Assembly: GCF_001194135.2 (NCBI RefSeq)
Contig: NC_069000.1
Location: 8,336,092 to 8,400,091 of the forward strand
Direction: 5' to 3'
From: Octopus bimaculoides
Taxonomy: Eukaryota
DNA: 64,000 nt
Position numbers and translations under genes: made by a program. The stretch's first letter is position 1. Each line of letters opens with the position of its first letter. The notes beneath the pieces were generated by a model. That model searched no databases. It had not been told where the DNA came from and saw nothing but the letters and a program-made list of their open reading frames with translations. This document shows positions 3,983 through 57,169 of this stretch, piece by piece.

Positions 3983-4055
3983 AATAATAATAATCATAAT
4001 AATAATAATAATAATAATAATGATGATAATAATAAGAGCAATAATAACAATAAAG

Positions 4056-4323
4056 CTAGTTGTCCTTTTTGCTTTCGATTCGACGTCGTGTCCACTTAAT
4101 GAGTGTTTCTGGTGATCGATAGAGGAAAATGAGTTTGGCATAGAGATCCTCCTCCAGACGGAACTCATGCATCTCACGCACAAGGTATATGTCGAGGGTC
4201 AGCTTGAGGATTCGGTCAACAAACGGCAGTTCACGGAACATTATTGATGGATGCATATTGATGGTTCCCATGCGAAGGAAGCGTGCAATCAACAGAATAA
4301 AAGAAACATAGAGTCCTGCAATG
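4056..4323 (-). CDS. Piezo: Piezo terminal exon W41 (inner helix + CTD, stop TAG at 4056-4058)
   Basis: [11 protein letters not shown]...ELPFVDRIL...[20 protein letters not shown]; cttccag acceptor. Confidence 0.98.
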
Positions 4324-11500: not shown

Positions 11501-14500
11501 TGGGCCACAGAATTGTTAGCACCGAGCAGAATGCTTAGCACCATTTCATCTGTCTTTATGTTTTGAGTTCAAATTCTGCTGAGGTTGACTTTGCCTTTCA
11601 TCCTTTCAGGGTTGATAAATTAAGTACCAGTGAAACACTGGGGGTTGATGTAATCAACTTAACCCTTCCCCAAAATTTTCAGGCCTTGTGCCAATAGTAG
11701 AAAGGATTATTTTTTAAACCAGATAAACAAATTGACGTGCTTTCCTTCACTAAATACACAGTACACTATCAGCAGTGGGATATGAAACAAGAGCGAAGAA
11801 GTGGTTAAACTTGACCATTGCATCCTACAATAACAATCTTCTGATTTGGGCAGATTAACAAATTTGTAAAAGGGAGGCAACTTATAACTGTAAAACAGAC
11901 TTCACTATATTACTGGTACAAACCTTACGGATTTGAACACATTTGTACTGGCCGACAAGGTCATTCTAATTAAGCATGAAGTAGCTTAATGAAACAGAAA
12001 CACAATATTGATTACAAGAAGGAAGCAGAATGACAGATAAAAAGGATGTAGACAAGAAAAGAAGGACATGGATTAGATAACAACATGTGGACAGTAGAAA
12101 GGATTTGATTAGGAGACAACCTGTGGATAATAAGATGGGGAGGAGAGTAACACAGTAAAAGAAAAACGAAACAATATGTAGACAAAAAGGACAATGAATA
12201 TGAAAATAAAAGATAGACATTACATACCCATAGCCAGTAATTAAAGAGAAAGTGGCTGGGGCTATACGGTCATTGAAAGTGACCAATATCAAACGGCTAG
12301 CGTTACTCTTCGAGTTCGGTTTCCAGATGTTTAAGTCAGTTTCTTCAGAAACATACCACCAGTCTACTCGACCACTGCTTTTGCTTATATTTCCAGACCG
12401 GAAACCCAAATATATGTCAGGTTCTTCTTTTTCTTCTGCAATAAAAACAAAAATTTCTAGTACCAGAAAGTAATTACTGTAATCACCAATATCTTGAGCT
12501 GCTTATACCAACTGCAAATTCCCCTGAAAATCTTCAAACTAAGAGGAATTATAACGATTCTAGATCCTAAAAGAAACAGCACCACACAAACTAATCACCT
12601 TCTTATGCACACTTGCAAGAATTTTAAATATCATCAGCCTACAAATCCCACTTTACAACATTGGTTCAACCCTCTACATTTAACACCACATCCATTGGAG
12701 GGCGCATGGCTCAGTGGTCAGAGCATTGGGCTCACAATCATGAGGTAGTGACTTTGATTTCTGGACCAAGTTGTGTTTTTGAGCAAGGCACTTTATTTCA
12801 CGTTGCTCCAGTTTGCTCAGCTGACAAAAAAGGAGTAATCCTGTGATGGACTGGCATCCAATCCAGGAGGAACATATACAACACAGAATTAAGGAAATTG
12901 ACATTATGAGTTTATGGTTTGGGAAGGACCTTTGAGCCTTGTGTGTATGTGTGTGCGTGCGCGTGCGTGTGTGTGATTGTTTCTTGGCTACCAGAAGGTT
13001 AGCCCAGCAGCAGTAACTTTGATAGTAACAGTTATTTAAAATTTAAATTGTATACACATATTTCAACTTGTATAAATTAGTAAATCCAACACAAGTGTAC
13101 AATAGCAAAGTTATAACTTACTCATCAAGGGATGTACAACCGAAACAATACCATTGTTCTGCAACCTCATAAACGGGTAGAACAGTTTTGGTATGGCGCT
13201 GAAATTAGAGAAAAAATAAAAAGACATATTTCTAAAGGTAATCACTTCATAAAAGTTTCTTTCCTTTTTATATATTTTGTACAGGTTATCTGGGTCATTA
13301 TTTTCTCTTTAACCTTGTTGGAGTGGAATGAACTAGACCAGTGGTTCCTAAAGTGGGTGGTGCTGCTCCCCTGGCGGGCAGTGGAAAAATCCAGTAGGGC
13401 ATTGACGAAAAGTGGGGGTAATAATGGGGTGGCCAATGGATGTAAAAACAAACAAAATAATGGGTTAATTAGGTTAAGTTTTATTTCTGAAATACAGCTG
13501 TTTTGAATTTGCTGCAGAAAGTGGTCTGTGTTTGTGGTGGTGGTTAGTAAGGGACGGTGTTAGGAATGCGGCCTGGGTACCAAGGGGGTGGCAGTCCAAA
13601 AACGTTTGGGAACCTCTGGACTAGGCTTGCCCAAAGTCTAGAAGAACAACACTCAGTTATGGAAGATGATCACACATGTGATTGGGGCCATCATTAAAAA
13701 ATGGATTGAAGGGCCACGTATTCAAGTTTTACAATAAGCTGTATAAGTAAAAAAAAAAAAATAAAAAAATAATAAAAAGAGCAGCCATTGTAGTTAGAAT
13801 TTCTGGGAACATGGTTAGCTACTTCCTGACCTGGTGGGATACAAAACTTGGACAATCACTAGGAGAGGAAAAATCTATAATGGTGAAATTATTCAGTAGG
13901 TGTGTACTAAACTGTAAGACTTTAAAATGTGTGGTTGCAATTTTAGAAGCAGAGATTATTAAGGAAGATTTTCACTACAACCTTGTGTGGATATGTGCAA
14001 GCTTTTTAATCCTCATTAATCCATGATATTTTTTGACTGAAGAGCTTTCCTTAAGCTTTCAGTCCACTTCAGAGAGGGAAAATATAGCTTCTGCTTAAAG
14101 CATAGGATTTTAAAATTTAGTCACTGTTTTAATTGCTTCTTTCTGTTGCCAAATTGTCATCAAAAAGTTCCAAATAGTGTAGCAGATTATAACACCTAAT
14201 TCACTTGTTGTCTGATTACTATTGCCTATAAATCTCGCCAGGAAAATAATAACTCATGTGGGCTGTTATTTCAACCAGAAGTGATTACCAGCAAGTTTTC
14301 ATTGTTTTATTGTTACTTTGCACAAAAGTCATCTGCTCGTTTTGACAAAAACTAAATACTGAAATTTAAAATTCAGTCCGACTCTGAAGGATCTCATCCA
14401 AAATGACATTGACATGGAGATGCTTCATGTTAGAGTAAGACTTGCTCACGAATCACTAAGCTCATCAAATCCAGGCTGCTTGCTATGATAATAAGAAATA

Positions 14501-17212
14501 TCTGACAAACTGTCTGTCTTTGTGAGATTCCATTAATGTGAAATTTCTAAGCTGACTGACAAGCTTAAAGATTTATTAAACATTCATCTTATGTCTTCTT
14601 GTAAGGAAGGAAATCCCATTTAAAGATTTTTATTCACAAAGCTTGTCAGTTGGCAGCAACCAACACCACCACCACCACCATCATCAACAGTATCAGTTGC
14701 AGTGGTGGTGGCATCAGTCACCATCATCATCATCATCGTCATCGTCGTCATCACTACCCTTCTCTTCTGTCACTGAATGAATTTAAATACAGCTTTCTTT
14801 ATCTGTTTGTTTGTTTTCATCTTTCTTTCTCTTCTACGCTTCCTTCCACTTTTACTTGTAAATGTGAAAGTCTGGCAATGCATCTTTATGAAGCCACTAC
14901 TGACACCCTATACAGGAGCTTCCAAGGTTTTACACAAGACTGCCAAATATTTCACCTCCAAAACACACAGTAAATGAATGAGAAACTGTTAGCATTACAA
15001 GACTGAAGGAAAGATATTTACGCATGATGTCACCAGGTCCTGCATTACATCCTGTCCTCACCACATAGGTACCTCAATGAATCACTTGTCCATATCTTTC
15101 CATAATTCCTTCCTGAGTCACATAGATTCACAGGGCCAGTTTCCTGGATTCTCAGGTATAGACACTCCCCCTTGGAGAAGATACTATTTTGTTGCAGGAA
15201 TGCTCATTTGGAATTAGATTTCTGTTATGCTAAGCATGTTACTATATCACCATTGTGGAAGAAGACTGATTTCAACATAATATTCATGGATGCTCAACAG
15301 ATTCAGTGTAAATAGCATCCAGGATTACAGTTCATACTTCTTAATGTCAAAACAGAGCTTGTATATAAATTTTTACCACTTGAACTAGACACAGATGATA
15401 CCCTCAAAAAGAAAAAAAAAAATGGGACGGTCATAGCTTCAAAGTCTTTGGTTATAATAGGTCTGCCTGGTGAGCACTGACCTGGGGCTGAACATCACTA
15501 CGAACCGTAAACAATGCTATACATTATCCAACATGCATCTATTCATTATACAAAGATTTATGCATATGAAAAACATACAAAATAAAAAAAAAATAAACAC
15601 ATTTGGTCAGACAATGAATTAATTAAGACTACTTACACCAGTTGACTTGAATTTCCACCACTGATGATTTGAGCAAGTTTGCTTGCGGTGTCATTGGTGA
15701 GCGTGACTTGAAACTGCTTAGAGAAGGTGCCTGGAGACTGAGGTGATCTCTTACCTCTGAAGAGAGAAAAGGGTGGAACAATCCTTTTAGTTAGTATAAC
15801 AATCATCCTATAACAGATTACAGAATAACCTCCCATCAAACATGTACATGGACTCGGGAGGCTTGGATTTCTAACGAAGCAGACGATGACTTAACTCTGA
15901 TGATACACTGTCATCATGTTTCTTAAGTAAAACTGGGACCCACTTTATCAATCTTGTCCTCCCCAAAACAATTAAAAACATACATTATATGGTTCTATAG
16001 AGCTATTGGCAACATGACCATCCCCAAATACAACAATAAAAAAACAATTGTTATATTTCAGGATGGTCATTTTTTTGTTTTTTTGCCAAATAAACACATG
16101 CACTATATATTCCATTCTTCATTCGTTTATATTACTGTTCTTATTTTATCTTATGTCCATTGTCTGGAAATCTTTCGTCACACATATGTGACCTTTTCAG
16201 TAACCCCTTAAAATAAGAACAGTAATAAACGAGTGAAGTATGTAAATATAGTGAGTGTGTTTATTTGACAGAAAGAAAAACAAAAAAAAAAAATGACCAT
16301 TCTGAAATATAACAATATCTGTTTTCAACACAAGGTTTCACATCAGGAATCTTGCAACACAAATTTGTAAACGTAAAAAAAAATCATGAAAAAAGCACTT
16401 ACCTTGTAAACGAGACATCAAGATCCATGTCCATATGTTTGGCATCCATGAGGTCACGAATGAGTTTCTTCTGACTTGGTGGACTTATCCCCCACACAGA
16501 TGTTGATTCGCCATTGATAGTGATTACTGTAATATCTTGTGGGTCATAGCTGGTTAGAAAACTGCTGGCCCTCTGTTTCGGAAGTATGTATGTATGTATA
16601 GATATAATTATTATATATGTAAAGAGTTAGCATGAATGTAAGACAGAGAGAAGAACAGAGACAACAGAAAGCAAAATAGGGATACTTTCAATTGGAAAAA
16701 AAGGAAGGATTCTGAATATTAGCATAAATCTTGAAACTAAAACATCTTACTAGCAATACGTGAACAAGATGAAAGCCCTCAAATCAATATATTAACCCTT
16801 TCAAAAGTTGAAAGTTGTTGGTAGTGTTTTATCTTTTACTTGTTCCAGTCAGACTGTGGCCATGCTGGGGCACTACCTTGAAGGGTTCGGTTGAACAAAT
16901 TGATAACTCATAACTTACTTATTTTCTAAATCTGGTACCTATTCTATCAGTCTCTCTTGCTGAGCTGCTAATTGAACAATGCAACCATTACATCAATTTA
17001 AATGCAGTGCTATCTTCAGCTGCCCTGCATTTAAACTGATGTAAGGATTGCATTGTTCAATTAAATGGATCTGCTTGATGGTCGTACTGCACCATCACTG
17101 GATACCCTGTTGCTTATTTTGATTTTATTCACCTTATTTTGAGTTGTACAGATAATACCACACTAATTTTTGGTGCTTCAACTTACGTACCAAATTCCAC
17201 TGAATCTCAGTT

Positions 17213-17257
<45 letters not shown>

Positions 17258-20200
17258 CACATGTGTGTGTTTGTGTTTGTCCTCCACACCACCTCTTGAC
17301 AATTGGTCTTGGTTTGTTTATGACCCTGTTAGAATTTGTGGGGAGGGAAATAGTCAATCACATTGACTCCAGTACTTGACTGGTACTTATTTTATCGACC
17401 CTGAAAGGATGAAAGACAAAGTCAACCTTGGTGGAACATGAACTCAAAACACAAAGACAGACAAAATACCACTAAGCATTTCACCTGGCAAGCTAACGAT
17501 TCAGTCAGTTTGCCACCTTAACAATGAAAATAATAATAATAATAAAAATAACCACCATAGGACTGCAAAAATACCTACTCCAGAAGCAAGGGAAACTAAT
17601 ACAAATAGCCACAAAACACGAGCAAAACAAAAAACTGTTTTCAGTATTTAAGGAAGCTGACAAATACAAACAAGAAATCAATCTACCTAACAAATACGAA
17701 GAAGAAGAAGAAGAAACAACAAAAGCTATAAAACAAATGAAATCCTAACTAAAACTAGAACAGCAACGGACCATGATAAAACGATGGCAAGAAAAGCCCC
17801 TACATGGTAAATACTGGGCTAAACTAAATGCGAAAGAAATAGACNNNNNNNNNNNNNNNNNNNNNNNNNNNNNNNNNNNNNNNNNNNNNNNNNNNNNNNN
17901 NNNNNNNNNNNNNNNNNNNNNNNNNNNNNNNNNNNNNNNNNNNNNNNNNNNNNNNNNNNNNNNNNNNNNNNNNNNNNNNNNNNNNNNNNNNNNNNNNNNN
18001 NNNNNNNNNNNNNNNNNNNNNNNNNNNNNNNNNNNNNNNNNNNNNNNNNNNNNNNNNNNNNNNNNNNNNNNNNNNNNNNNNNNNNNNNNNNNNNNNNNNN
18101 NNNNNNNNNNNNNNNNNNNNNNNNNNNNNNNNNNNNNNNNNNNNNNNNNNNNNNNNNNNNNNNNNNNNNNNNNNNNNNNNNNNNNNNNNNNNNNNNNNNN
18201 NNNNNNNNNNNNNNNNNNNNNNNNNNNNNNNNNNNNNNNNNNNNNNNNNNNNNNNNNNNNNNNNNNNNNNNNNNNNNNNNNNNNNNNNNNNNNNNNNNNN
18301 NNNNNNNNNNNNNNNNNNNNNNNNNNNNNNNNNNNNNNNNNNNNNNNNNNNNNNNNNNNNNNNNNNNNNNNNNNNNNNNNNNNNNNNNNNNNNNNNNNNN
18401 NNNNNNNNNNNNNNNNNNNNNNNNNNNNNNNNNNNNNNAGAAACAATTCCTATCATAGTAGGTGCCTTAGGTATAATAAAAAAATATTCAGACAAATACA
18501 TAACAAAAACACCAGGACTTACAAATATATATAACATACAGAAAATTGCACTACTGGGTACTGCACACATTCTACGCAAAACACTTTCAATACAGTAAAC
18601 ATAAGAGCACCACAGCAAACCACAGCACATACCCAAGGCGCACAGAGCTGCGCTCGGTAGTGAAGTGAAAGCACGTTATAAAAATAAAACTACTGAATAA
18701 TAATAATAATAATAATAATAATGGTAAAGAGCAATTGTGAATTAAAAAGCTGTATTAAGGACAAAATTGTCGCACATTGACTTACAGGAGTCGTATCGTA
18801 GAATTTGTGTAGAAGCTTGTATTGTGATTCATCTAATGCGAAAATGTCTGCTTGTTGTACCGTCATTTTGAACAGGGGCTGGAAAAAAAAAACAAGAAAA
18901 GTAAACATCCTGACTTACATTGTTCAGTTTTACAGATTCATGCAATATTCTTATTTTTCACATTTTACATTCCCACATTTATATACGATATCTCTGTATT
19001 TCAACATCTGTCAAAATACTCCTATAAAGCCTACAGTATACCCATACAGTATACCAATCCTTCATATGGGAAATGATAACATTTATTTCATCAACTAATA
19101 AAATTGTGAAGAGGAGGCACAAAAGCTCCATACTTCTTTGAAATTTAGTATCCATTAACCATTGATATCAATTTAACATCCAGTTCTACACTGCAGATTA
19201 ATTTAATCTAACTCTTTAGTGTTCAAACTGGCTATATCCGGCCAAAATATTCTACCTGTTTTATATTCAAACTGGTCTGATCTGGCCTCTCACACCAACC
19301 CTACAATATCATTCTGAAAATTAACAGTTACTTCATCAAAATCTCTAAGCAATGTGAATAAAAAAGCATTACATTTGAAAAAGTAATGTGAATGCTAAAA
19401 GGCTTTTTTGAAAATATGCTAAATATCTGAAAAGAATTAGATTTAAAATTCATTAACAATATTAATTATACTTAGCCATGATAATTTAGAGAGAAAAGGC
19501 CTAAAAGATATTGAAAGGAAAAGTACACTTACTTGATAACCACCCAGGGAAATCCTGACGGTACATGTTTTGGGAGGATTTACTTCATAAACAGTGTTAG
19601 CAAAGGAAAATAGCACCAAGGGGAACCAGATGATGAAAATGATTAATAGTAGCAGCAGACCTCCTACTCCATATTTGATAGTTGACTTTCTCTTAAGAGC
19701 TCGAGGGGTAGGGTATGTCTGTAAGATAATAAACATTGTGATATATAACAATTATTTCAAAGGGTTTATCAACAAAAGTAACAGACATTTCAACGTTAAG
19801 TCTTCGTAGTACAACAATGTACTAGTCTTCAATGTTAAGTCTTCCTATAATTACTAGTACAACAATATCAACAACTCCAATCTATAGCGATCAACATCAA
19901 TTGCAACAACAGCTACAAAACTGAGGTAATGTTAAAGATTATCATATTCATTTACATAGTATAGCAATAAAGGAACTGAGCCACCAACATCCTCGTTATA
20001 TGTAGAGTGTTGGCACTGGAAATTTAAAATAATGAACATGATGATGATGAATCAAATTAAAAATTTTTTTTTTTTAAACTTGACTGATTTTAACACAAAA
20101 ATTAAATTTTAAAATAAATCATAATAACAGTCTTTTTTATAAGCTAAGAAAAACATGAACAAGACAAAAAAACTTACAGCTTCAGCATGCCGCCAACATT

Positions 20201-23200
20201 TCAGAACGAATATATTGGCATAGATATCTTCCATCTGTAACCAACTGCCCAATGCCAAAGTGGTGTCTGTCCACATCCAGTCCATGAGAGCACGAAGTTC
20301 CAAAAGGAATGGAATGACGAGAAACCTGAAACAATGAACAGCGTTGGTGGAGGCAGTAAGAAACCGGACAATGTCTCTGATACTTCTTTTACAACATTTT
20401 TACCACATCAGAATTGGTGAGATGTCTCCTATTTTTTCTATGTTGAAACAACTGTTTTCTCTTGCGATCACTAACCATCCCTCTCCATATTGAATATGGC
20501 TATTAGTCACACTGCCACTTCTCTGAATAGGTAACGTTCCTTCCCCCAGCAGTAGAAATGACAAGCTAAAAACTACTGGAAATTCTAGCAAATTCTTAGT
20601 CTAAATGTTTCCTGAATTGTATTTTCTGTAATCCGCCTCAGTCCAATTCTATATAATGTACAAGATATCAATGGTGGTAAACAGTAAGAAAGAGTAATCT
20701 ACCTTGTTATTGATTTGAAGAAATTTATCGTCAGTTTTGGTCTAAATATGGGAGCAAATATTTTCTAGATGGTAAACCACAGAATTATACACATAATGGC
20801 ACCTCACGGTTCAGATATGTCAACACCGATCATTCAGTCTATGTTAAATTAAGGGTCGAGACAAGATGTAGCAGAAAAGAATAGAGGAAAGCTCTTAAAG
20901 TGCTTACCCTTTAAACAGGAACAAGTTGAGGTATGAATAGTTTTTAGTTAAGAAGTTTCCAAGAATCCTGGTTGGATAACCTGAACGAATCTGATGTGCA
21001 GACAGAGCAAAATAGATGCATTTCACAAAGTACCACAACATTGCTGGAACGTTTTTGATAAACATTCTGAAAACACAATAAATCAAAACAAGAAAAACAA
21101 CATTAGAAGACTATATGCGATGGGAATTGCGTAGAAAGAGGGAGAATGTAAAAATGGAAGAAGAGAATAAAGAGAAACATGAAAGAGAAAAGAGAGCTAG
21201 AGAGACAAAGATATGGGTTTCTGTGTTTATCCTTGCTTATGGTCTTGCATGTTGGGTAAGGACTGAAAGATTACTGTCACAGGTACAAACATCTGAAACG
21301 GGGTTCCTCTAAAGCGGTACACCAGATGACATCTCATCGGGTGAAGAATGCTGTCCTAGAACAGGAACAATTGCAGAGAGTCATCCTAACCAACAGAGTG
21401 ACAGTTACTCCCAGGACCAGAAGGTGGAGAAGATGGAGTACTGGAGAGTGTAAAAATAGAGAAAGGAGACAATAAAGGTAAATGTGAAATAGAAAAGAAC
21501 AATAAAAAGAAAGAATGAAGTCAGCTCACCTGTTTGTAATTGCTGGTAGGATGAAGAAGAGCCAGATATGAACAATAATGACAAGGGAGACTTGGAAAAT
21601 GAATTTCCCATGGACACATTTACGAAGAAACAGAGCACGGTCAATGATGATGAACATAAATTGGACAACCAACATCACAAGAAATGGAATTGGAACCTGG
21701 AAAGAGAGAAATTTGAGGTTTGTTAGTAACTGCTCAATTTCCAAATTACTTGACTGGAGGATATAGAGAAATTGTAATGAAGTAAGAAGAGGCCGGCATG
21801 CATGGGCGACTGCTGGTCTTCCATAAACAATCTTGCCCGGACTTGTGCCTGGGAGGGTAACTTTCTAGGTGCAATCCCATGGTCAGTCATGACCGAAGGG
21901 GGGTCTCAGCACACATGTTCTACTATTTATGTGATAGTAGTTGGCTGGAATGGTCAATATTATAACTAGTTTAGAAACTATTTAAGTAATTCACAACTCA
22001 TCCATCTCAGCAACGTTTAACAGAGAAATGGTGGCGGCATCTCTACCAGTATATTGAATGTTAGGAAAATATTGGACCTTACTGAAAAGATGAACAATAC
22101 TTGAACCAGAGGCTGGAATAAATAATGGTTAGGAATCAATATAACATAAGGTTAATTGAAGACTTACTCGGTTTTCTTCAAGATATGTTGTAACACTTCC
22201 TTCACCAGATTGCTGCCAAATTGAAAGAATACCAATATCAGCCATAGAATAAAACAGTAATTCAATAGAATATGGCTATCAATAGCAAAACATTTAATTC
22301 TATATTTCTGAGATGAAATATTTATATTATGTATACTGTTTATATTAGTTGGACTGATGTCCTCATCTTCATTGCTGCTTTCAATACATTTTTCGGTTAT
22401 TGTACGCTTTGGCCTTTTCCGAGTGTCTTGTATTGAACTTGGTTGCTGCAGTGGAATTTTGAACCAATACAAGAGCCAAGTGCAACACAAGACACCTGAA
22501 GAAGACAGAAGCATGCACAACAGCTGAAACACAAGAAAAATCAACAATCAAGATGAGGACACCAGTCTGATTAATACAAACAGTTGACATAACAAAAAAA
22601 TATACCTGGTGTAATGTAACATAAAACACATACATTGATAAAATCAGTTACACATAGGCCCCATGGTGGGCACAAGCAGTAGAGTGTTAAGGATTGAACA
22701 TAAGTTACAGAATAATCTCCCTTGCAACAAGCATAGTTACCTCTCTTGGAAATATTCACAATAGCAACATGGCATTCACCGTTTGTTTTCTTAGCATCAG
22801 GCACCGTAAATATTTCCCACCCACTCAGTGGTTTATGCTTTAAAATCGTAAATACATCTCATATAAGATCCGGCAATAACAAATTGTCTGATATCATTGC
22901 TGAGATATCCACAGTTGTCACCTAAAATCTCACTAAACTCTAGTTTTAGTTTTAACTAATTTTAATAAACTTCAAGTCAAGTATTTAGCCCATTTTAATC
23001 AACTTTATTTCGTAAACAAATCTGAGACATTGAGCACACACTACAAATTATTATCATCCATAATAAAGGCAATGATGGTAGTGGTAGTGGTAGTGGTGGT
23101 GGGGGGTGTAGGGGTCATCTTCCATACATCTCTGACGGTCTGGGGAAAGGCATGAACATCACTATTTTAGGCTTTATCTTTTATCCTTTCTTTTACTTCT

Positions 23201-26200
23201 TTCAGTCATTTGACTGTGGCCCTGTTGGGGCACCACCTTGAAATTTTAATCGAATATATCGACTCCAGTACTTATTTTTTTAAAAGCCTGATACTCTATC
23301 GATCTCTGTTGCTGAACTGCTAAGTTATGGGGACATAAACACACCAGCACCGGTTGTCAAGCAGTAATGGAGAACAAACGCAGAAACGATGACACACATA
23401 CATAAATATATATATATATATANNNNNNNNNNNNNNNNNNNNNNNNNNNNNNNNNNNNNNNNNNNNNNNNNNNNNNNNNNNNNNNNNNNNNNNNNNNNNN
23501 NNNNNNNNNNNNNNNNNNNNNNNNNNNNNNNNNNNNNNNNNNNNNNNNNNNNNNNNNNNNNNNNNNNNNNNNNNNNNNNNNNNNNNNNNNNNNNNNNNNN
23601 NNNNNNNNNNNNNNNNNNNNNNNNNNNTCAGCTCAAGGCTATAGAGAAAAAACACTTGTCCAAGATGCCATGCAGTGGGACTGAACTCGGAAACATGTGG
23701 TTGGGAAGCAAGCTTCTTACCACACAACCACGCCTGCTTGATTCTTTTTTTTTTTAAATCTGAATCTTTATTTCTGTATATCTTGAACAAGAAAGTTCAA
23801 TTAGTAAATAGATTTGGCAAAAATTAATTTTTTAAAAATAAAACAGAGAAGGTAACAAACGTTTGGGAGACTGAGCTTTGATAGAGAAATGGTGTTACTT
23901 ACAACAGGTCCGAAGGCCCAATATCCAAAGACAACAATGAGGAAGGCCAAAAAGTCACAGACAAACATTGGTGCATATACATCGACAACTGCATTGTAGG
24001 CAGAGTTGGTCATTTGGCGATAGAAATTCTGGAATGGTTTCATAACCGATACAAACCTGCAACATATAAGCAAACAATATTTACATCATGCAATTATATG
24101 TTATACACACTGATATATTATAAGTACATGTGGGAGAGAGGTAAAACAGAGATGTTATAAATGTATACAAATGAAAACTTGGAAAGAATTTATTCAATTG
24201 GCAACATGATCAAAAGTTCAAAACACTTCTTTTCCATCTTGCTTGGAACTTCTCTAATGATGATAACATGATAAAAATATCTCAGTCTACATTCACATAT
24301 ATGCACAAGACCAAAGTCAGTTAGTTCTCTCAGATGCTGTGAATGCAAGATTACACAGGCTGTGACAACATATTCAGACGAAGCCAGCATTGAATGATGG
24401 GTGTATGATGGTGATGGTGATGAGATGGGGCAAGGTGGAAAGAATAAAGGAAATTATTCAGGTGGGGATGAAACTGGATCTGCTGGAGGAACAAGAAATG
24501 AGACGTGACATCCAGGTTGTGAAAACAACAGCAATAAATTAATGTTAATTGGATCCACTTCAGTTTATTTATCAAAGAATCAACACAACACCACATAAGA
24601 GATATTAAGAGGTATATATAAGGAAGAAGAAAAAAAGGATCTAGTGCCACCATTAATTTATACACATAAGAGGTTGCAGATTCAGCTAGGGACTTACCAA
24701 AGACTTCAGTGAGAAAAACCTAGACAACACAATAAAGAACCTAATGAAGGAGGCAAAAGTGTATAAAAAAAGTGTTGTGTGTCAGTCAAACAAAACTCTT
24801 ATAAAAAGCTACCAAAACCTAAAATCCTTAATATACAGAGACAGACAGATGGGTAGGTAATGTTAAAAAATATCCCACACAAGTCAGGAGACATAGAAAA
24901 ATAATAAAAGAAGATGTTATTCCCTTTACATTACAATCAATTAATTTCAAAGTATATTGTTACAAACAAAACATTTCAAAATACATTATTACATATTCCA
25001 AAGTATCTTTATGTATATCCAAAACAAATTACTGCATTTCAAAATTACGTGTTCCAAAGTACATTTCTACATTTAAATAATTTCAAAATTTATTATTAAA
25101 CACTCCAAAGCACATAATTACAAAAGTACATAATTAAATATTACAAAGAACATAATTACAAACTGGTTTTGCATCTTACAGGAGATATTCATTGCAGTGT
25201 GTGTCATTACACACATACATTGCAATGAATATCCAGTCAATGTTAAATTATGATAGGTGGTTAAATTTGACCTTCTTGAGACTAAAACAAATCTGATAGG
25301 GTAAATGTTTGGCTGGACAACCTTCCTGTTCTTTTGTCATTCACTCTAGCTACACGTATATCACTTTATCTGTCTCTTTTAAACCTAAAAAGCACGGTCA
25401 GTTTATTTATATAAGCAAGTGTAGCTGGTGATAAGAAAATGAAGCAGGGGAAACCAGATAGAATGGTATATCTAAACCTATGGAATGTTAAATGTTGCAG
25501 TAACAGAGGAGGGTGGATACTGAAGGGGATGAGGGATTACCCGACACCGCAGACAAAATATCTTACCTTGTTTCAAGAACTGTCAAAATACTGAAGAGCA
25601 AAAGCAAAGAAAATATCACAAACACAGAAGCAACAGCCATATGCAATGACTTTTTGGAAAGAGGTCAACAATAAACAATGCAAAGCTTTATTGAATGGTT
25701 ACAAAATAAAATTTGTCAACACAATCATCATCTCTTTTCATCCATAAATTCATCTGCGTCATCGTTGTCATCCTGAATCTTCCACCCTTAACACCTACAT
25801 TGTCAATCGCAACCAGAGACCCAGTTACATTCTTATTCTACCTAATCACATTAGTTCTTTTTTGCCTCAGATGGTCACATCTCTCCACCATCTTCATATT
25901 AGGTTCCTGTACATTACTGCCTGTTGTAAATATTCAAGTACATCAGTCTGAAAGTACTTTCATAGACGTGGATAATTGCCATCCTTTGCCAACAGACTTG
26001 GCTCACATCCGGTTGTGGGAGAGGATGGCGTTTAAACAGCATCCCAGTTAATATTTAGCACATTTTTATTAAAATTAATTACTGTGTAATTTGAAGCCTC
26101 ATTATATGTAGGTGGATCTGTGTGATGAAGCCACTATTTAGCAGAGCTCTGTTAGTAAGGTATTTCCTTGTCAAAAGTATCCTAAGAAGAAGAAAGATTA

Positions 26201-27663: not shown

Positions 27664-29333
27664 CAGTGTCACTGAGAAAATTTAAAAAGCAAAGTGATTT
27701 ACTCACATCATGCATCTGTGGAGATGCTGGAGGACTTAGTTCCTTTCCTTCGGCTTTTGCCAGATCAGCTGTGATGTCTTCAGCATCTTTCCACAAGCCA
27801 TAACGCTACAACACAGCAATTCATTTAATTAGATACATGTTTTTATTGCAGCACAAACTGAGTCGTCTTGTTCATGGAGCCAACATTCAATATAAATTAT
27901 GAATTTTTAATCGAAGCAAACAGAAATCTAAATGCTTTTTTAATTGCTTTTAAATGCTTTTTTTATGATGAATTTTCCTTTACAGTGAAATTTCTTAAGG
28001 TGAATTTTCTAGACATGGAAACAAAGTATGAGTGAAAGTGTGAAGAAATGCGTGTTATTTATCAAAGTCCTCTTGGTGACTGCATTCTACAATAGACCTC
28101 CCATATACACACATTTGCTGTAATCCAGTAGAATAAGAGGAATAAATCAAGAATGTCACATACCTTCAAAATGGTTCTGTGTATAAAGAGAACTAAAAGC
28201 AAGGCAAGATCATACATTGCATAGTAATCTTGCTTCTCAATACCCAAGATTCGTGGTGGCCAAAATGGATTGTTTTTCCAGTTTTTAGAATTGTCGTCAT
28301 CATTCCAAGGAAAGAATGTAAACTGGAACAAGTATTTTAATACGACTATAGCCTGGAAGTAAGAAGAAAAAACCCCATTTAAATCTCACTGTAACTGACT
28401 TAAATAAGTGATAACAAAATTAAATCTAATGTGCATTTGTCATTCTGGAAACAGAACTAATACAATACAGGATTATAAAAGTCAAACTTATTCACTATTT
28501 CATCAACCCTGAAGGGATGAAAAGCAAAGTCAGCCTTGGTGGAATTTGAACACAGAATGTAAAGACGGACGAAATATGGCCAAGCATTTTGCCTGGCATG
28601 CTAGCAATTCTGCCAGCTTGTTGTTTTAGTAATTATAATAATAATAATAATAATAATCCTTTTTCCTGGAGGCACAAGGCCTCAGATTTAGCAGGAGGGG
28701 ACTAGTCAATCATATCGACCCCAATGTTTCACTGGTGCTTGATTTATTGACCCATAAAGCAACAAAGGCAAAGTCGAACTTGGCGAAATTTGAAATATAA
28801 CAACAACAACAATAATAATAAAAATAATAATGATAATTATCTACCTCAGTATAGGTGATAACGGTGACCCAGAATGTCTTGGATGGTCGAGGAACAGATA
28901 GCATTCCCCAGAGAAAGACCATAATTGGCAGAGGCATGGAGAGCAGACTAGCAGACATCATTTGGTTGAGAACGATGAGAAAATAGCAAACCAACTCGGA
29001 GCGAGAGATGAGCATGTAATAGTAAGCTACGAGTAATCTGTAGAACACTGGCTGGGCTAACTCGAATTCATTTTCTTCTTCAGCATTGTCAATGTCTTGC
29101 AAACTGGAAAAAATATGGAAAAAAAGAAATAATCAAAAACTCATCACTATTGAATAAAATTATCATTAGGCTGTGTGGTAAGTAGCTGTGGTAAGTAGCT
29201 TGCTTACGAACCACATGGTTCCGGGTTCAGTCCCACTGCGTGGCACTTTGGGTAAGTGTTTTCTACTATAGCCTCGGGCCGACCAAAACCTTGTGACTGG
29301 ATTTAGTAGATGGAAACAAAAAGAAGCCTGTCG

Positions 29334-29371
<38 letters not shown>

Positions 29372-31284
29372 TATGTTTGTGTGTATGTTTGTCCCCCCAA
29401 CATCACTTGACAACCGATGCTGTTGTGTTTACGTCCCTGTAACTTAGCAGTTCGGCAAAAGAGACCGATAGAATAAGTACTAGGCTTACAAAGAATAAGT
29501 CCTGGGGTCGATTTGCTCGACTAAAGGCGGTGCTCCAGCATTGCCGCAGTCAAATGACTGAAACCAGTAAAAGAGAGTAAAAGAGAGTAAAAAGATGATT
29601 AAACATTTGAAATAAGCCATTAAACATTTAACTTATTTTCTAGCATACAAATCAATTCTAGTAAATAGTGTAAACATGTAAGATAAACATTCAAATGTCG
29701 TCACTATTTTTCCTAATCCTGCTGCATTTCACATGGAATTTTTGGTCCTTCAACCATTGTCTTGGTGTTTAAGTCGACTGTAAATTTGGGTCAGAAATAT
29801 TCAACTGGTATGTTGGAAAATACAGTATTAACCAATTAACAAAGAGAAAGTCTTCTTTCCCATTTAAAAAAGCAAAAGAAAAAACAGTTGAACATAGAAG
29901 AGGAGATGGAAAATGCTTAATACTAATAAAGACATGTAATAAAGGCACATGTATGGAAAAGACTTGTGAATCAAATACTGGGTACTGCTCTGGATTTTAA
30001 TTTTATACTGGCAAAAGAGACAGTAATAAATCCAGTAATGTGCACAACTCTTCTATAATAATATTTTGTTGTATACCCAATTGTATATTAGCTAATAACC
30101 CATTTTCTGTAGCGATGTTTGAACAAAAATTTTAATAATTTTATATTTTGTTGAATTTACCTGTATTTACCTGTAATTAAAGTCACTTTGTGACAAAAAT
30201 TTTGGTATAGAATTGGTTGAGAACCTTTCGTTAATTTATCTTCCAAAAATCACATTAATATGTTGATAAATAAAAAAGTTAGAGTTGTTTAATGAAACCA
30301 GCCTAAATTTATGATTATGTTAGAAATTAATTGAAACACATAAGGGGTGTAATTTGGTTAGAAATATGGTAACGAAAGGGTTAAAGCGTGGACTGAATGC
30401 TTTTTATGTGGCATCAGTATCCGTAGGGTCACCAAGTAACATTGGAAGCGGGGATCTTGAGTCAGACAATGAAAGGTTAGAGCTAAACAGGTGTCTAGCT
30501 ATAGTGGAGGTCCATGGTTACCCAGAGAGAGAGAGAGAGAGAGGGAGGGAGAAGAGAGGAGGGAGGGAGGATGAGAGAGAGGGGAAATAGAGAAAGAGGA
30601 CAGAAACAGGGGTGCTGATGTAGGAGATACTTGATTACTTAGTCAGAGGGAAGAGCAAGGGAAAGAGAGAGAGAAAGTGAGAAGGAGTAGAAAACAGCAA
30701 AAGTGCAAGAGAGAACAGGGGAGAGATGGCGGCGAAGTTCCGGGGTATACTCACAAGTAATGGAATAGAAAATTTGCTGAAGAGGTCACAGTTGTGTGAT
30801 GAAAGTTTTCCAGACAATGGACAAGATAAAATAAGAACAATAATATATGAGTGAAGAGTGAATACATAGTGCATGTGTTTATTTGGCAAGGAAAAAAATG
30901 ACCATCCTGAAATATAGGTTATCCTATATCTAAATTACATATAACAGTTATCCTGTATATATATTATATATAACAGTTATCCAATATATATCATACATGG
31001 AGGTACCCAAAAGTAACTGGAAACGTTCTCTGTGTGACAAGCCTGTAGTAAGTTCAGTAATCCAATATTTATTATATATAGCAGTAATCTAATACATATA
31101 TATAGCAGTTATCCAATATATATTATATATAGCAGTCATCCAATATATATATATATATCTAGCAGTAATCCAATATGTATTATATATAGCAGTAATCCAA
31201 TATGTATTATATATAGCAGTTACCCAATATATATATATAGCAGTTATCCAATATTTATTATATGTAGCAGTAATCAAATATTCA

Positions 31285-31345
<61 letters not shown>

Positions 31346-34300
31346 CAGTTACTCTAACTTGCATAACTTTTCTATTTAGTGGTGGTATTGACCTCTTTTT
31401 TCTCTCTTAGTCTAACAGACTATGGCAAACCACTGGCCCCCACAAAACACAAGACAATGCCTATTGCAAAGTTCAAATGCCAATCGTGTGTGTGCATGTG
31501 TGTGTGTGTGTGAAATACTTACTTTGTCTTGGTGAAAGACTTTCTGATATCAGTTTCTTGCGGAGTGTCTACTTCCACTGCTATTTTGTTAACGCCGCTG
31601 CAAGAGACAAAAGAGATTAACAAGCCATTTCATACATTCTCAACACTGTACAAAAGTTTATTTTAATCTTTACTGGTTTACCTGTAGCACAGTTTGAACT
31701 TTTATCAGTCATTGATTGCTACCTGAAACACACCCACTCAATGAATACAACAAGAAGTTTTACATATTGTAAGCTAAAGCAATTACAGAAATTGCAGCTT
31801 AAGGTTCTTATATTCAATTATCAGAGATGGTAACTTCACTTATATCTATTTCTTGTTTCAGTCATTGAACTGCAGCCATTCTAGGGCACTGCCTTAAAAG
31901 GTTTACAGTTCTATATTTGAGAGATGAGGAATTAAGTACATTATTTACATTTGACAGATACATCCACGGGCATATGGCATAGGGGTTAAGAGCGCAGGCT
32001 ACAATGTGTTTATGAGTGTAACACCTAAGCTCCATGCAGCTCCAGCAGAAGGTAATGGCAAACTTATGCTGACTCTTTCGCCACAACTTTCTCTCACTCT
32101 TTCCTCCTGCATCTAGCAGCTAACCTGTGATGGACCGGCATCCCGTCCAGGTGGGGAACCCATATGCCAATGAAAACAGGAAACTGGCCTTTATGAGCCA
32201 GGTATGACTCGATAAGGAACAAACAACAACAACAATTTATCTGGCCCTGTCTATTAATAATTACTGTTATTTATTGGTGTTCTGCTCAATTAGGTAAGTT
32301 ATTTGTAACAAGAATTATGGTTATTGTTACAAATACAATGTTATCTTCATATAAAAAAAAACGGAAAAAAATTAATATATCTCTTACATGTCTTCTGCTG
32401 CTCTGGTAACAGCTTCTTTGGAATCAACAGTAGTTATTCCTTCTTCCATTGCCGATAAGGATAAAAATGTCAACTTCTCAGCCTGAAAGAAAAAGGGAAA
32501 AAAACAAGTTTTTTTTAATAATAATAATAATAATAATAATGAACTTATTGTATACAGGGCTCAGATGGCTAGACAGTTTTACAAGATCTAACAAATCAGA
32601 AAGCCGACTAAGAAATAATATATGTGACACATATAAAGCACCTATGCTGCCACCACATAAAAAGCACCTAGTACACTCTGTAAAGTGGTTGGTGTTAGGA
32701 AGGGCATCCAGCCATAGAAACCATGTGAACAACTGGAGCCAGGTGCAGTTCTTTGAGTTGTGAGCTCCTGTCAAACTGTTCAACTCATGCCAGTGTGGAA
32801 AATGGATGTCAAATGATGATGATGGTAATGGAATACATGTTAATATAACCAATACGTGGAGTATTACAAAACATTGAAAATAAAAAAAGAAACTAACCTG
32901 TATTTTCAACTTCTCTTTCCTCATGTCATCAGTCAAAGTATAAGCGACACGTCGATAATTCCTAGATATTCTATTGAAGAATTTAATAAGCCAATTAGCC
33001 ATACTAACTAGGATAGCGATGAACAAACTGAAGCTATTGGAAATCTTTGAGCAGAGAGACTCTGGAAAGAAAGGATACAGAAAATCAAGTCACCATCTTA
33101 TTCAGCAATTCCATTTCTCTTCACATAAATAATAAGCTCCTTTTAGTTTACAAAAAGTATCTATTATCTATAGACATACAATCTATACAGTAAACGTGAT
33201 GTGGATGTGTGTGTTCGTATTCGTTTTTTTGTTTCAGTCATTTGACTGCAGCCATGCTGGAGCACCACCTTTAGTTCAACAAATCAACTCCAAGGACTTT
33301 CAAGTTGCTCAAATCCTCTAGCCTGGTAAAAATGAGTAGTGCTTGTATTTCAAAGGGTCAGCCTTGTCACATTCTGTGTCATGCTGAATCTCCCTGAGAA
33401 CTATGTTAAGTCCAAGCAAGGTTGCATATGGAAAACCAGTAGTCGTCCATGTATACCAGCCTTCCTTTTCCACACTACCAATGTTATCCAAGGGAAAGGC
33501 AAAGGCTTGGCACCAGTGATGCTGTAACTCATTGCTACAGCTGAGTAAACTGGAGCAATGTGAAATAAAGTGTTTTTTTGTCAAGAACACAATACATAAC
33601 CTGGTCCAGGAATCGAACTCACTACCTCATTATTCTGAGCCTGATGCTCTAACCAGACTTAAAAGTAAGTACTGGGGTAGGTTTGTTTGATTAAAACACT
33701 TCCAAGTAGTGCCCTAGGATGGCTGTAATCCAATGACTGAAACACGTAAAAGATAAAAAGACCTACAATTAAAATATCAAATAAACTGCAACAAACCTTT
33801 AGGTTTAGTAGTTTCTTCATCTTCAACCTTATCAACAGAAGTTCCCATGACGATGGCGACGTGTTTCTGAAATGAAACATGGAAAGATTGAAAGGGATTT
33901 GTGTGAAATATTTACAATAACAATAATAGATGCCAAATATAACTGCAGAAATATAACCGAATTCAGCCAAACAGTGTACTTAATTGCAACAAAAGCTGAA
34001 GTAGTGTTATGGTAAGTAACAACTGTTTAACCAGTTTCTATATCTGAGAGATGAGGAATTGTGTACACATTAACAACAAACAAGATGAGGACAAATATCT
34101 GTCTAATGTAAATAATGAACTGTTTAACCATTTAGCATTTAAACCAGCCATACCAGGTCCAAATATTCTACCTGTTTTATGTTCAAATTGGCCAGATCTG
34201 GCCTCTCACATCTATCCTACACAGTGTCATTCTAAAAATAAACAATCACATTATCAAAATCTTGAAGCTACAAGAAAATTCATGATTCAAAACACTGCAA

Positions 34301-35544
34301 AGCATTGCGTTTGACAGAGTATCCGAATGCTAAAGGGTTAAAACAGGAAATGACAGATTTATTAAAAGAAAGAGAAGCTATAAAATAGATAACCTTCCAT
34401 CATCTCTGATTTACTTACATCACCTGATGGTGTAGAGTCGTGTTGACTTACTGGTTGGTCTGTTTCTTCTCTTGCCTTCTCCAGAGCTGTGTCAGTTCCT
34501 GAGTCGATAGCAGTGGACAACAGCTAAGATGTAGCAAACAAAGAGATGGTGTTAATGAGATTCAAATGAGTTATAAAGCAAAATATCACTTCTGTTTCAT
34601 ATATAAAGTAGTTTCAAGGACACTATTCTGAAATGATGATGTGGGCATGCATTAGTATTTTTACATATGCATTCTCAGTTTGTTTCAACCACTAGAGTAA
34701 CTTGGGATTTATGAAAGGAAAGTTATATATTACTCAGAACATGTGAAACAAGGGCCAACTAAAAGTCTGGAAACAAACATGGACATTTAGGATTAAAACT
34801 GACGAAAATGTTTTGGACAAAAAGGGTTAAGCAGAAATTCTCACCTGAAGTGGCCCCAATGCTTTATCTTCACTGCCACTCCGTTCTGACCGACCAATAT
34901 TCAAAGAAGTGGTTGGGCCCTGATCTGGGCTTTCAGGTACCTCTTCTGTTTCATCTTCAAATAAATAATAGTCCCCAGAACGGATAGCTGAAAAAGAAGA
35001 TAGTGCAAAGTGAAGGACTGTAAACAGCAGAGTCAAAAATTAAGTCAATAAGATACAATTAGAAAAGAGAAAAAGCTGAAACTAAAATCACAAAATTTGA
35101 TTCTTAAAGATATCACACTTCAAAAATGAAAACACAAAAACTGTAAGCCCACATAACTAGAAACTTAAAACTGTAGATGAATGTAATTGACAGTAATACA
35201 TGACTCAAATGGGTCATGCTCTACTGATCTGAATGTAAGGACAGCAAAACCCATCTAAGAGAAAGTGTCATCAGTGGAACAACACAACAAGAATAGAAAA
35301 ATACCTTGGAAATGTTCGTCGGGTTCATGGAAGCTCTTCTTCAGTCCTGCTTGCTTAGCTTTCAAATGCTCCATCTTTTTTTTGATGGTATACAACACTT
35401 CAGTTTCTCTCTCTTTCTGAAGCAGCACTTCTCTGATCAGTATACGATTGATCAGTTCAGCTCCCCTGGACACAATAAGTGGGTTCATTTAGTGATTAAC
35501 CAGTAATAGACAAAGTGAGGAGATGGAGAGAGTAGAAAAGAACT

Positions 35545-35580
<36 letters not shown>

Positions 35581-36018
35581 AATGGTTTCAAATTTTGCCA
35601 CAGGAGTAGCAATTTTAGGGGAGGGGATGAGTCGATCACAAAAACAAACAAATAAAGAACAGTGAATACAAACAAACCTGGATGCCAATCGTCTTTGAGC
35701 TTCCAGTTCTGCTACAATATGACGGAAATAATGGGAGCTGTACACTCTTCGTTGCAGAAGAAGGAAAGCAAAGCAGATCACATCCCATCCCAGACCATTT
35801 TTGTCTGCTTCACAATTACCATGTTGCTCTACAAAACAGGGATTTTTATTTGCTTATTCNNNNNNNNNNNNNNNNNNNNNNNNNNNNNNNNNNNNNNNNN
35901 NNNNNNNNNNNNNNNNNNNNNNNNNNNNNNNNNNNNNNNNNNNNNNNNNNNNNNNNNNNNNNNNNNNNNNNNNNNNNNNNNNNNNNNNNNNNNNNNNNNN
36001 NNNNNNNNNNNNNNNNNN

Positions 36019-36055
<37 letters not shown>

Positions 36056-36337
36056 CTTCTAGCAGTACACCATTTACATTTTAAATCTACTATTTTTATA
36101 GGTCAGATCTTCACTATTTTACACACACACACATCTTAACTCTGAACCTGCCAATAAACTCTAGTGTTTCCCAATCGCTGTCTCCACTGAGTATTTATCT
36201 TCGGCACATAAAAGACACCATTTCGAGTGTGGCCGTTGCCAGTACCGCCTGACTGGCCTTCGTGCGGGTGACACGTAAAAGCACCCACTACACTCTCTGA
36301 GTGGTTGGCGTTAGGAAGGACATCCAGCTGTAGAAAC

Positions 36338-36376
<39 letters not shown>

Positions 36377-37359: not shown

Positions 37360-37396
<37 letters not shown>

Positions 37397-48470: not shown

Positions 48471-48504
<34 letters not shown>

Positions 48505-50472: not shown

Positions 50473-50506
<34 letters not shown>

Positions 50507-54695: not shown

Positions 54696-54728
<33 letters not shown>

Positions 54729-55721: not shown

Positions 55722-55758
<37 letters not shown>

Positions 55759-55923
55759 TCTTTTATTNNNNNNNNNNNNNNNNNNNNNNNNNNNNNNNNN
55801 NNNNNNNNNNNNNNNNNNNNNNNNNNNNNNNNNNNNNNNNNNNNNNNNNNNNNNNNNNNNNNNNNNNNNNNNNNNNNNNNNNNNNNNNNNNNNNNNNNNN
55901 NNNNNNNNNNNNNNNNNNNNNNN

Positions 55924-55974
<51 letters not shown>

Positions 55975-57136: not shown

Positions 57137-57169
<33 letters not shown>

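What the first reader, a model, noticed from the sequence alone, without database searches (positions are those of the whole stretch)
4227..4262. Charge reversal at a Piezo pore glutamate: MFRELP instead of MFEELP
Seen: the terminal exon reads ...[17 protein letters not shown], with Arg encoded by CGT at 4233-4235 (minus). Known (numbering from memory): mouse Piezo1 has ...RGFFSEISHSIMFEELP, and E2495/E2496 affect conductance, Ca2+ permeability and ruthenium red block. The alignment from GLYVS is gap-free, so the E2495 equivalent is Arg and the E2487 equivalent is Asn. M2493/F2494, R2482 and PE(2536-7) equivalents are retained. CGT cannot be recoded to Glu by A-to-I editing. Inference: altered selectivity, conductance or blocker sensitivity.
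Basis: partly seen in the sequence, partly recalled or inferred. Interest (0 to 1): 0.7.

Follow-up and report, generated by a model that had tools for sequence, protein, structure and literature searches.

The report
Octopus Piezo pore arginine, mollusc-wide
The last exon of an octopus Piezo touch-channel gene does carry an arginine where mouse Piezo1 has a pore-lining glutamate, but snails and a clam have the same arginine and the position varies widely among invertebrates, so this is an ordinary lineage trait and its effect on ion flow is untested.

Summary
CGT at 4233-4235 (minus strand) encodes Arg in ...[10 protein letters not shown]. It lies in the terminal coding exon (4056-4323) of an intact Piezo gene. 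The alignment to mouse Piezo1 2466-2547 has no gaps, so Arg sits at E2495. E2496, R2482, M2493/F2494 and P2536/E2537 are retained.

E2495 is not a conserved glutamate outside vertebrates. In 118 diverse Piezo C-terminal domains the site reads E44, D38, R10, T9 plus others, and is the 10th most variable of 78 columns. The neighbouring E2496 site is 91% acidic.

Arg-Glu is the usual molluscan state. It occurs in Aplysia, Lymnaea, Mya and the closest unnamed relatives, which encode it with CGA rather than CGT. It also occurs in a soft tick, and a starfish has Lys. This rules out an assembly error and an octopus-specific innovation.

The invariant pore acids E2133 and E2172 and both constrictions are intact.

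The likely effect is a modest tuning of conductance, Ca2+ permeability or ruthenium-red block through a less negative lateral portal. That is inference only, because no molluscan Piezo has been recorded. Interest is low to moderate.

The parts
4233..4235 (-). CGT codon = Arg at the position of mouse Piezo1 E2495
   Evidence: Read directly; gap-free alignment to mPiezo1 2466-2547
4230..4232 (-). GAA codon = Glu, equivalent of mouse E2496 (conserved acidic site)
   Evidence: this site is acidic in 91% of 118 diverse CTDs
4056..4323 (-). Terminal coding exon: end of the inner helix plus the C-terminal domain, with stop TAG at 4056-4058; acceptor AG at 4324-4325
   Evidence: It is the only CTD-coding exon in the window
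12228..12435 (-). Penultimate exon (end of the cap and start of the inner helix, ...[17 protein letters not shown]). The GTATGT donor leaves GG, which joins C of the last exon to make Gly
13122..13198 (-). Cap exon ([25 protein letters not shown])
   Evidence: AG/GTAAGT splice sites and the frame closes
15637..15756 (-). Cap exon ([39 protein letters not shown])
16403..16572 (-). Cap exon (…[19 protein letters not shown]…)
   Evidence: tblastn with P0121, Crassostrea, Lymnaea and Ridgeia; splice sites
18786..18878 (-). Cap exon ([31 protein letters not shown])
19533..19718 (-). Outer-helix exon ([38 protein letters not shown]…ISLGGYQ)
20178..20325 (-). Anchor exon holding the PF(X2)E(X6)W motif ([13 protein letters not shown]) and the E2133 and E2172 equivalents
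20908..21066 (-). Exon for the last blade unit (…[36 protein letters not shown])
21530..21753 (-). Exon (…[26 protein letters not shown]…). A second in-frame acceptor at 21696 scores the same
23903..24028 (-). Exon ([42 protein letters not shown]); first exon of the 592-aa model
27770..57610 (-). Further upstream Piezo exons, about 25 pieces. Examples: 28164-28352, 28845-28925, 32387-38454 and 47940-54079, which match O. vulgaris transcripts; 56073-56222 and 57296-57610 were picked by eye. The gene runs off the high end of the window and its N-terminus is not in the window
3983..4053 (.). (AAT)n microsatellite starting 3 bases after the stop codon, followed by a ~200-bp dispersed repeat at 3781-3990; this is 3'UTR or flank

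Best explanation
This is the last coding exon of the Piezo mechanosensitive-channel gene of an octopus.

What is shown:
- The Arg is a real, inherited residue.
- It occupies a naturally variable position on the wall of the intracellular lateral portal.
- It sits next to a conserved acidic residue, the E2496 equivalent.
- Arg-Glu at this pair is the usual molluscan state, probably ancestral for the clade that holds cephalopods, heterobranch gastropods and heterodont bivalves. It is not an octopus novelty.
- The rest of the pore is canonical: the anchor motif with E2133, E2172, the hydrophobic inner-helix gate (L/L at 2475/2476), R2482, and the M2493/F2494 and P2536/E2537 constrictions.

What is inferred:
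- The channel should still be a mechanically gated cation channel.
- Compared with vertebrate Glu-Glu, Arg-Glu removes two negative charges per subunit, six per trimer, at the cytoplasmic exit.
- This would be expected to lower unitary conductance, relative Ca2+ permeability and ruthenium-red sensitivity somewhat, in the way fly and spider Piezos with Glu-Asp or Asp-Asp have been discussed.
- It should not invert selectivity.
For: Sequence and alignment:
- Searches give the codon, the gap-free alignment and the Pfam match.
- An 11-exon, 592-aa open model has all AG/GT splice sites.
- The model aligns end to end with human and mouse Piezo1 (1961-2546) at E about 1e-172 to 1e-168.
- It matches Pfam Piezo_THU9_anchor and Piezo_cap over their full lengths.

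The gene is expressed and orthologous:
- Upstream exons are roughly 90% identical to expressed O. vulgaris Piezo transcripts MN081841/2.

The Arg is conserved:
- The closest relatives share it: P0001 at 85% identity, P0002-4 and P0006.
- They encode it with the synonymous CGA, in three independent assemblies plus a 3.6-Mb contig.
- Named carriers of Arg-Glu are Mya arenaria WAR12852.1, Lymnaea stagnalis CAL1533266.1, Aplysia californica XP_012946306.1 and the tick Ornithodoros turicata. Asterias rubens has Lys-Glu.
- A neighbour-joining tree of CTDs puts the window in a clade with these molluscs. Arg lies on all deep branches, and Leu (oyster), Asn and Gln are nested within.

Site variability:
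- The 2495 site reads E44 D38 R10 T9 among 118 CTDs, and the 2496 site is 91% acidic.
- E2133 and E2172 are invariant in 25 taxa, including the window.

Literature:
- E2495/6 line the lateral portal and affect conductance, Ca2+ selectivity and ruthenium-red block (PMC7796548; bioRxiv 10.1101/2020.03.12.988378; PMC13232553).
- Loss of ruthenium-red block in fly and spider has been ascribed to Glu-Asp and Asp-Asp at this pair (PMC8042031).
Against: - No molluscan Piezo has been recorded electrophysiologically. PMC11682238 states that their roles are uncharacterised. The size and even the direction of any effect are therefore unknown.
- The molluscan tree rests on 80 residues without bootstrap support, and several clade members are unnamed fragments.
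- The codon in this particular assembly could not be checked against reads.
- Side-chain orientation and possible salt bridges of the Arg could not be examined. No trimer model or coordinates were available.
Confidence: 0.8

Rival explanations
1. The substitution is functionally neutral. The position tolerates many residues, and the Arg side chain either points away from the permeation path or is neutralised by the adjacent or nearby conserved glutamates (E2496 and E2172 equivalents). Permeation would then be set by the conserved acids and would not differ measurably.
For: Thirteen different residues occur at this site across animals, including Leu, Thr, Asn, Val, Tyr and Lys. The oyster, inside the same clade, has Leu. 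E2133, E2172 and the E2496 equivalent are conserved.
Against: Arg is kept across cephalopods, gastropods and a bivalve despite synonymous codon change (CGT versus CGA), which suggests some constraint. Mouse mutagenesis of E2495/6 changes conductance, selectivity and block.
Confidence: 0.35
2. This is an octopus- or cephalopod-specific adaptive change that strongly alters selectivity, for example towards anion permeability or loss of Ca2+ entry. This is.
For: It is a charge reversal relative to mouse. The lysine-substituted '9K' mouse mutant, which includes E2495K and E2496K, is anion-selective (bioRxiv 10.1101/2024.08.23.609388).
Against: The residue is not cephalopod-specific. The 9K mutant needs nine substitutions. 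Here E2496, E2172 and E2133 are kept, and the cap still carries an acidic patch, EKEEP-D.
Confidence: 0.05
3. The Arg is an assembly or sequencing error, or lies in a decaying pseudogene copy.
For: The window is a gapped draft with nine runs of N. Reads could not be inspected.
Against: GAA/GAG to CGT needs all three bases changed from GAA/GAG. Relatives have Arg at the same site in independent assemblies. The ORF is open through 11 exons with canonical splice sites. Conservation to Piezo1 reaches E about 1e-172. The orthologue is transcribed in O. vulgaris.
Confidence: 0.02

Closest known systems
Mouse/human Piezo1 (PDB 5Z10, 6B3R, 8YEZ) and Piezo2 (6KG7)
   Same: The whole pore module (last blade unit, anchor, outer helix, cap, inner helix, CTD) aligns end to end at E about 1e-172. 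E2133, E2172, E2496, R2482, M2493/F2494 and P2536/E2537 are identical. The gate residues 2475/2476 stay hydrophobic.
   Different: E2495 is Arg. E2487 is Asn (Gly in Piezo2). E2170, K2173 and K2174 are His, Ala and Thr. The cap patch DEEED reads EKEEP-D.
Molluscan Piezo orthologues: Aplysia californica XP_012946306.1, Lymnaea stagnalis CAL1533266.1, Mya arenaria WAR12852.1, and O. vulgaris transcripts MN081840-43
   Same: They share the CTD signature (FILLIGR…STTG…, VREMxEF[RKQ][11 protein letters not shown]) and the Arg-Glu pair. O. vulgaris exons are roughly 90% identical to the window's upstream exons.
   Different: Crassostrea gigas has Leu-Glu. Two unnamed clade members have Asn-Glu and Gln-Glu. 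None has published channel recordings that I could find.
Drosophila Piezo (PDB 9W7X) and spider CsPiezo
   Same: They are invertebrate Piezos whose residue pair at 2495/2496 differs from mouse. The literature links that difference to ruthenium-red insensitivity (PMC8042031). From my own knowledge, the fly channel also has a much smaller conductance.
   Different: Fly has Glu-Asp and spider Asp-Asp, both still acidic. The octopus pair is basic-acidic.
Ornithodoros turicata (soft tick) Piezo XP_064455562.1 and Asterias rubens XP_033646701.1
   Same: A basic residue at the same site (IMFREMP and IMFKEFP), followed by Glu.
   Different: They are unrelated lineages, so the origins are independent. 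The hard tick Ixodes has Asp-Asp.

Membership tests
Piezo mechanosensitive channel family | C-terminal pore module (outer helix - cap - inner helix - CTD) homologous to Pfam Piezo_cap | tested here: met
   PF12166 matches at 1e-77 over profile positions 4-297 of 298. The terminal exon alone gives 6.7e-36. PDB Piezo1/2 match at E about 1e-172.
Piezo mechanosensitive channel family | Anchor domain with the PF(X2)E(X6)W motif and last transmembrane helical unit (THU9) | tested here: met
   PF24874 Piezo_THU9_anchor matches at 2.9e-89 over profile positions 1-238 of 238. The motif reads [13 protein letters not shown], with the E2133 equivalent.
Piezo mechanosensitive channel family | Long N-terminal blade of repeated four-helix units (about 38 TM in all) | tested here: inconclusive
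   Many upstream blade exons are present up to about 57.6 kb and match O. vulgaris Piezo transcripts. The N-terminal part lies outside the window: the O. vulgaris N-terminal transcript has no hit.
Piezo mechanosensitive channel family | Pore constrictions and conserved pore acids (E2133, E2172, E2496, M2493/F2494, P2536/E2537; hydrophobic gate at 2475/2476) | tested here: met
   All are retained; 2476 is Leu instead of Val.
Piezo mechanosensitive channel family | Acidic residue at the E2495 position | tested here: not met
   Arg is present. This is not a family-defining feature: only 69% of 118 diverse CTDs are acidic there.
Piezo mechanosensitive channel family | Forms a trimeric, mechanically gated cation channel | not testable with these tools
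   This needs expression and patch-clamp recording, or cryo-EM.
Molluscan Piezo clade (Arg-Glu type) | Groups with named molluscan Piezo CTDs and carries Arg-Glu at 2495/2496 | tested here: met
   Neighbour-joining tree of 145 CTDs; names. The support is limited: 80 columns and no bootstrap.

The most novel reading that the evidence does not exclude
Molluscan Piezos as a clade, octopus included, may have a measurably different permeation phenotype from vertebrate Piezo1/2: lower unitary conductance and Ca2+ permeability, weak ruthenium-red block and perhaps raised Cl- permeability. The cause would be an anciently fixed Arg on the lateral portal. That would make them a natural test of the lateral-portal model of Piezo ion exit. 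It would also show that the 'highly conserved E2495' of the literature is a vertebrate feature.
Probability: 0.3. Interest if true: 0.45.

Novelty: new member of a known kind. Interest (0 to 1): 0.22.

Why it matters
E2495 and E2496 are often cited together as conserved determinants of Piezo1 conductance, Ca2+ selectivity and ruthenium-red block. A 2026 paper calls them 'two highly conserved glutamate residues'.

The survey here shows that only the second is conserved across animals. The first varies, and is Arg in much of Mollusca. This gives a cheap and specific experiment: E2495R in mouse Piezo1, and Arg->Glu in an Aplysia or octopus channel. The experiment would probe how much the lateral portal's charge sets permeation.

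The result also warns against using ruthenium red as a Piezo blocker in cephalopod or snail physiology. It does not point to a new kind of channel or to an octopus-specific adaptation.

Tried and rejected
- Assembly error. Rejected because relatives encode Arg with a synonymous codon in independent assemblies.
- A second, alternative CTD exon (Glu-Glu type) in the window. tblastn with seven different CTDs finds only the 4056-4323 exon.
- Finding this species' own protein or full-length named cephalopod Piezos with the search for homologous proteins. The searches returned only fragments of at most about 750 aa and no cephalopod names. The organism was instead inferred from O. vulgaris peptides in a paper's supplement. 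Those peptides are truncated in the stored text, so the O. vulgaris C-terminus could not be read.
- Compensating charge changes. No consistent partner change at 2170-2174, 2487 or 2491 goes with Arg in the Arg-Glu taxa.
- The residue in C. elegans PEZO-1 (PDB 9UOX/9UOY). It never ranked among the alignments shown, and two guessed queries turned out not to be nematode.
- tRNA and Rfam scans of the window found nothing.
- The supplement of the bivalve Piezo phylogeny paper is not held.
- Structure prediction was not run. A monomer model without accessible coordinates would not show the trimeric portal geometry.

Full report
**What is in the sequence.**
On the minus strand the region reads ...CGC ATG GGA ACC ATC AAT ATG CAT CCA TCA ATA ATG TTC CGT GAA CTG CCG..., which is [17 protein letters not shown]. 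The Arg codon CGT occupies 4235-4233 and the following Glu (GAA) occupies 4232-4230. The reading frame enters from an AG acceptor at 4325-4324 and ends at TAG 4058-4056, so the terminal coding exon is 4056-4323.

Its 89-residue product matches Pfam Piezo_cap (E=6.7e-36). It aligns without gaps to mouse Piezo1 residues 2466-2547. The correspondences are:

| Window residue | Mouse Piezo1 residue |
|---|---|
| Arg | E2495 |
| Glu | E2496 |
| Asn | E2487 |
| Arg | R2482 |
| Met-Phe | M2493/F2494 |
| Pro-Glu | P2536/E2537 |

CGT contains no adenosine, so A-to-I editing cannot change it.

**The gene around it.**
Stop-to-stop ORFs on the minus strand contain many Piezo-like pieces up to about 57.6 kb. 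I used a 738-aa relative (P0121) for tblastn and searched for splice sites. This gave an 11-exon model from 24028 to 4056.
- Every exon has an AG acceptor, and every exon except the last, which ends at the stop codon, has a GT donor. Eight of the ten donors begin GTAAG.
- The model translates into one open 592-residue frame ending at the stop.
- It aligns end to end with human Piezo1 1945-2520 and mouse Piezo1 1961-2546, and with Piezo2, at E about 1e-172 to 1e-168.
- It matches Pfam Piezo_THU9_anchor and Piezo_cap over their full lengths.

Further upstream exons are roughly 90% identical to peptide sequences of Octopus vulgaris Piezo transcripts (MN081841, MN081842). Those peptides are printed in Table S2 of PMC12919962, and the same paper reports the transcripts as expressed. 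The O. vulgaris N-terminal transcript has no match, so the gene runs off the high end of the window.

The window therefore holds the C-terminal part, well over half, of the Piezo orthologue of an octopus that is close to but not identical with O. vulgaris. Only one CTD-coding exon exists in the window. This is a working gene, not a fragment or pseudogene.

**Is the Arg real, and how widespread is it?**
The closest sequences in the public protein collection are unnamed exon-sized fragments. P0001 is 85% identical and reads IQFRELP, P0002-4 read IIFRELP, and P0006 reads ISFRELP. In their DNA the Arg is CGA, a synonymous difference from the CGT here. This holds in three independent read-set assemblies and on a 3.6-Mb contig. 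That excludes an assembly error as the source of the residue and shows that it has been conserved.

A search of 1.84 billion cluster representatives gave 756 hits. Looking up the clusters gave names (some):

| Residues at 2495/2496 | Taxa |
|---|---|
| Arg-Glu | Mya arenaria (bivalve), Lymnaea stagnalis and Aplysia californica (gastropods), Ornithodoros turicata (soft tick) |
| Lys-Glu | Asterias rubens (starfish) |
| Leu-Glu | Crassostrea gigas |
| Asn-Glu | a crinoid and a sea urchin |
| Thr-Glu | amphioxus |
| Thr-Asp | Limulus |
| Tyr-Glu | a pseudoscorpion |
| Asp-Glu | a sea cucumber and one Ridgeia paralogue |
| Asp-Asp | bees, butterflies, planthoppers, centipede, spiders, Ixodes, shrimp |
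| Glu-Asp | Drosophila and Anopheles |
| Glu-Glu | vertebrates and Saccoglossus |

A neighbour-joining tree of 145 CTDs puts the window next to P0001. Both sit inside a clade with all the named molluscs. Arg is on every deep branch, and Leu, Asn and Gln are nested within.

I tabulated 118 CTDs taken from the 50%-identity representatives.
- The E2495 column reads E44, D38, R10, T9 and nine other residues.
- It is 69% acidic and 10% basic, and is the 10th most variable of 78 columns.
- The E2496 column is 91% acidic.
- E2487 is Gly in Piezo2 and in most invertebrates, so its 'loss' here means nothing.

**What is conserved in the pore.**
In a 25-taxon alignment of the pore module, E2133 and E2172 are invariant, and the octopus has both. 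The inner-helix gate is Leu-Leu at 2475/2476, and R2482, the Met-Phe constriction and the Pro-Glu constriction are kept.

The extracellular cap patch DEEED (2393-2397) reads E-K-E-E-P followed by Asp. It is not conserved in other invertebrates either.

**How it most likely works.**
Papers read here place E2172, E2487 and E2495/6 along the intracellular fenestrations (lateral portals) through which ions leave the pore. They report that neutralising E2495/6 alters cation selectivity, conductance, Ca2+ permeability and ruthenium-red block. A nine-lysine mutant that includes E2495K and E2496K is anion-selective. The Glu-Asp of fly and Asp-Asp of spider have been offered as the reason those channels resist ruthenium red.

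From this I infer the following.
- Arg-Glu makes the octopus portal less negative by two charges per subunit than in mouse.
- This should lower conductance, Ca2+ preference and block somewhat.
- The conserved E2133, E2172 and E2496 equivalents should keep the channel cation-permeable.

This step is inference. One paper states that molluscan Piezo roles are uncharacterised, and I found no recordings. A neutral outcome is a serious rival, because the site tolerates thirteen different residues and the oyster has Leu.

**Comparison with what is known, and novelty.**
The gene is an ordinary member of the Piezo family and passes every structural membership test that the window allows. The only 'failed' feature, an acid at 2495, is not family-defining.

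The Arg is a lineage-typical state visible in public molluscan records, not a novelty of this genome. A search for E2495R and related mutant names found no Piezo work. A 2026 paper still calls both glutamates 'highly conserved'. The comparative point therefore appears not to have been made. It is a small correction, not a discovery.

**Verdict.**
Interest is low to moderate (0.22). The finding is worth one mutagenesis experiment, and it is a caution about ruthenium-red pharmacology in molluscs.

Noticed in passing
Not in window: protein P0241 (Mya arenaria WAR12852.1), residues about 1222-1302 and 1313-1396: The annotated clam protein carries two complete CTDs in tandem. The first is the molluscan Arg-Glu type. 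The second is an Asp-Glu type that groups with hemichordate-like sequences. This could be a merged neighbouring paralogue or an alternative last exon, and it hints that some molluscs have a second Piezo lineage.
   Followed up: partly
window 3781-3990 and 12 other places (e.g. 2176-2384, 11508-11692, 41104-41309, 48527-48734): A dispersed repeat of about 200 bp, SINE-like and 70-84% identical between copies, occurs 13 times in 64 kb on both strands. One copy lies just 3' of the Piezo stop codon. ARAGORN and Rfam do not recognise it.
   Followed up: partly
window 3983-4053: An (AAT)n microsatellite of about 24 copies begins three bases after the stop codon. Many other di- and trinucleotide arrays lie in the introns.
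   Followed up: no
window 21696 vs 21753 (minus strand): Two in-frame AG acceptors 57 nt apart score equally for the exon that begins the last blade unit. Using the inner one would drop 19 residues ([19 protein letters not shown]) from a poorly conserved loop, so alternative splicing is possible.
   Followed up: no
window 12415-12435 (minus strand; cap exon start): The extracellular acidic patch that is DEEED (2393-2397) in mouse Piezo1 reads (K)EKEEPD here. It is not recognisably acidic in most other invertebrate Piezos aligned, so that selectivity element also looks vertebrate-specific.
   Followed up: partly
window 5980-5989, 6865-7779, 17845-18438, 23423-23627, 27030-27174, 35860-36018, 42825-43163, 53370-53510, 55768-55923: There are nine runs of N (2,664 bases), so this is a gapped draft scaffold. 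All of them fall in introns of the modelled part of the gene.
   Followed up: yes
Not in window: Ornithodoros turicata XP_064455562.1 vs Ixodes hexagonus (P0165): A soft tick has Arg-Glu at the same pair while a hard tick, spiders and other arthropods have Asp-Asp. This is an independent origin of the basic residue.
   Followed up: no
window 4230-4232 (minus strand): The conserved Glu next to the Arg is GAA. In a coleoid, A-to-I editing of its middle base would recode it to Gly. No editing data were available to check this.
   Followed up: no
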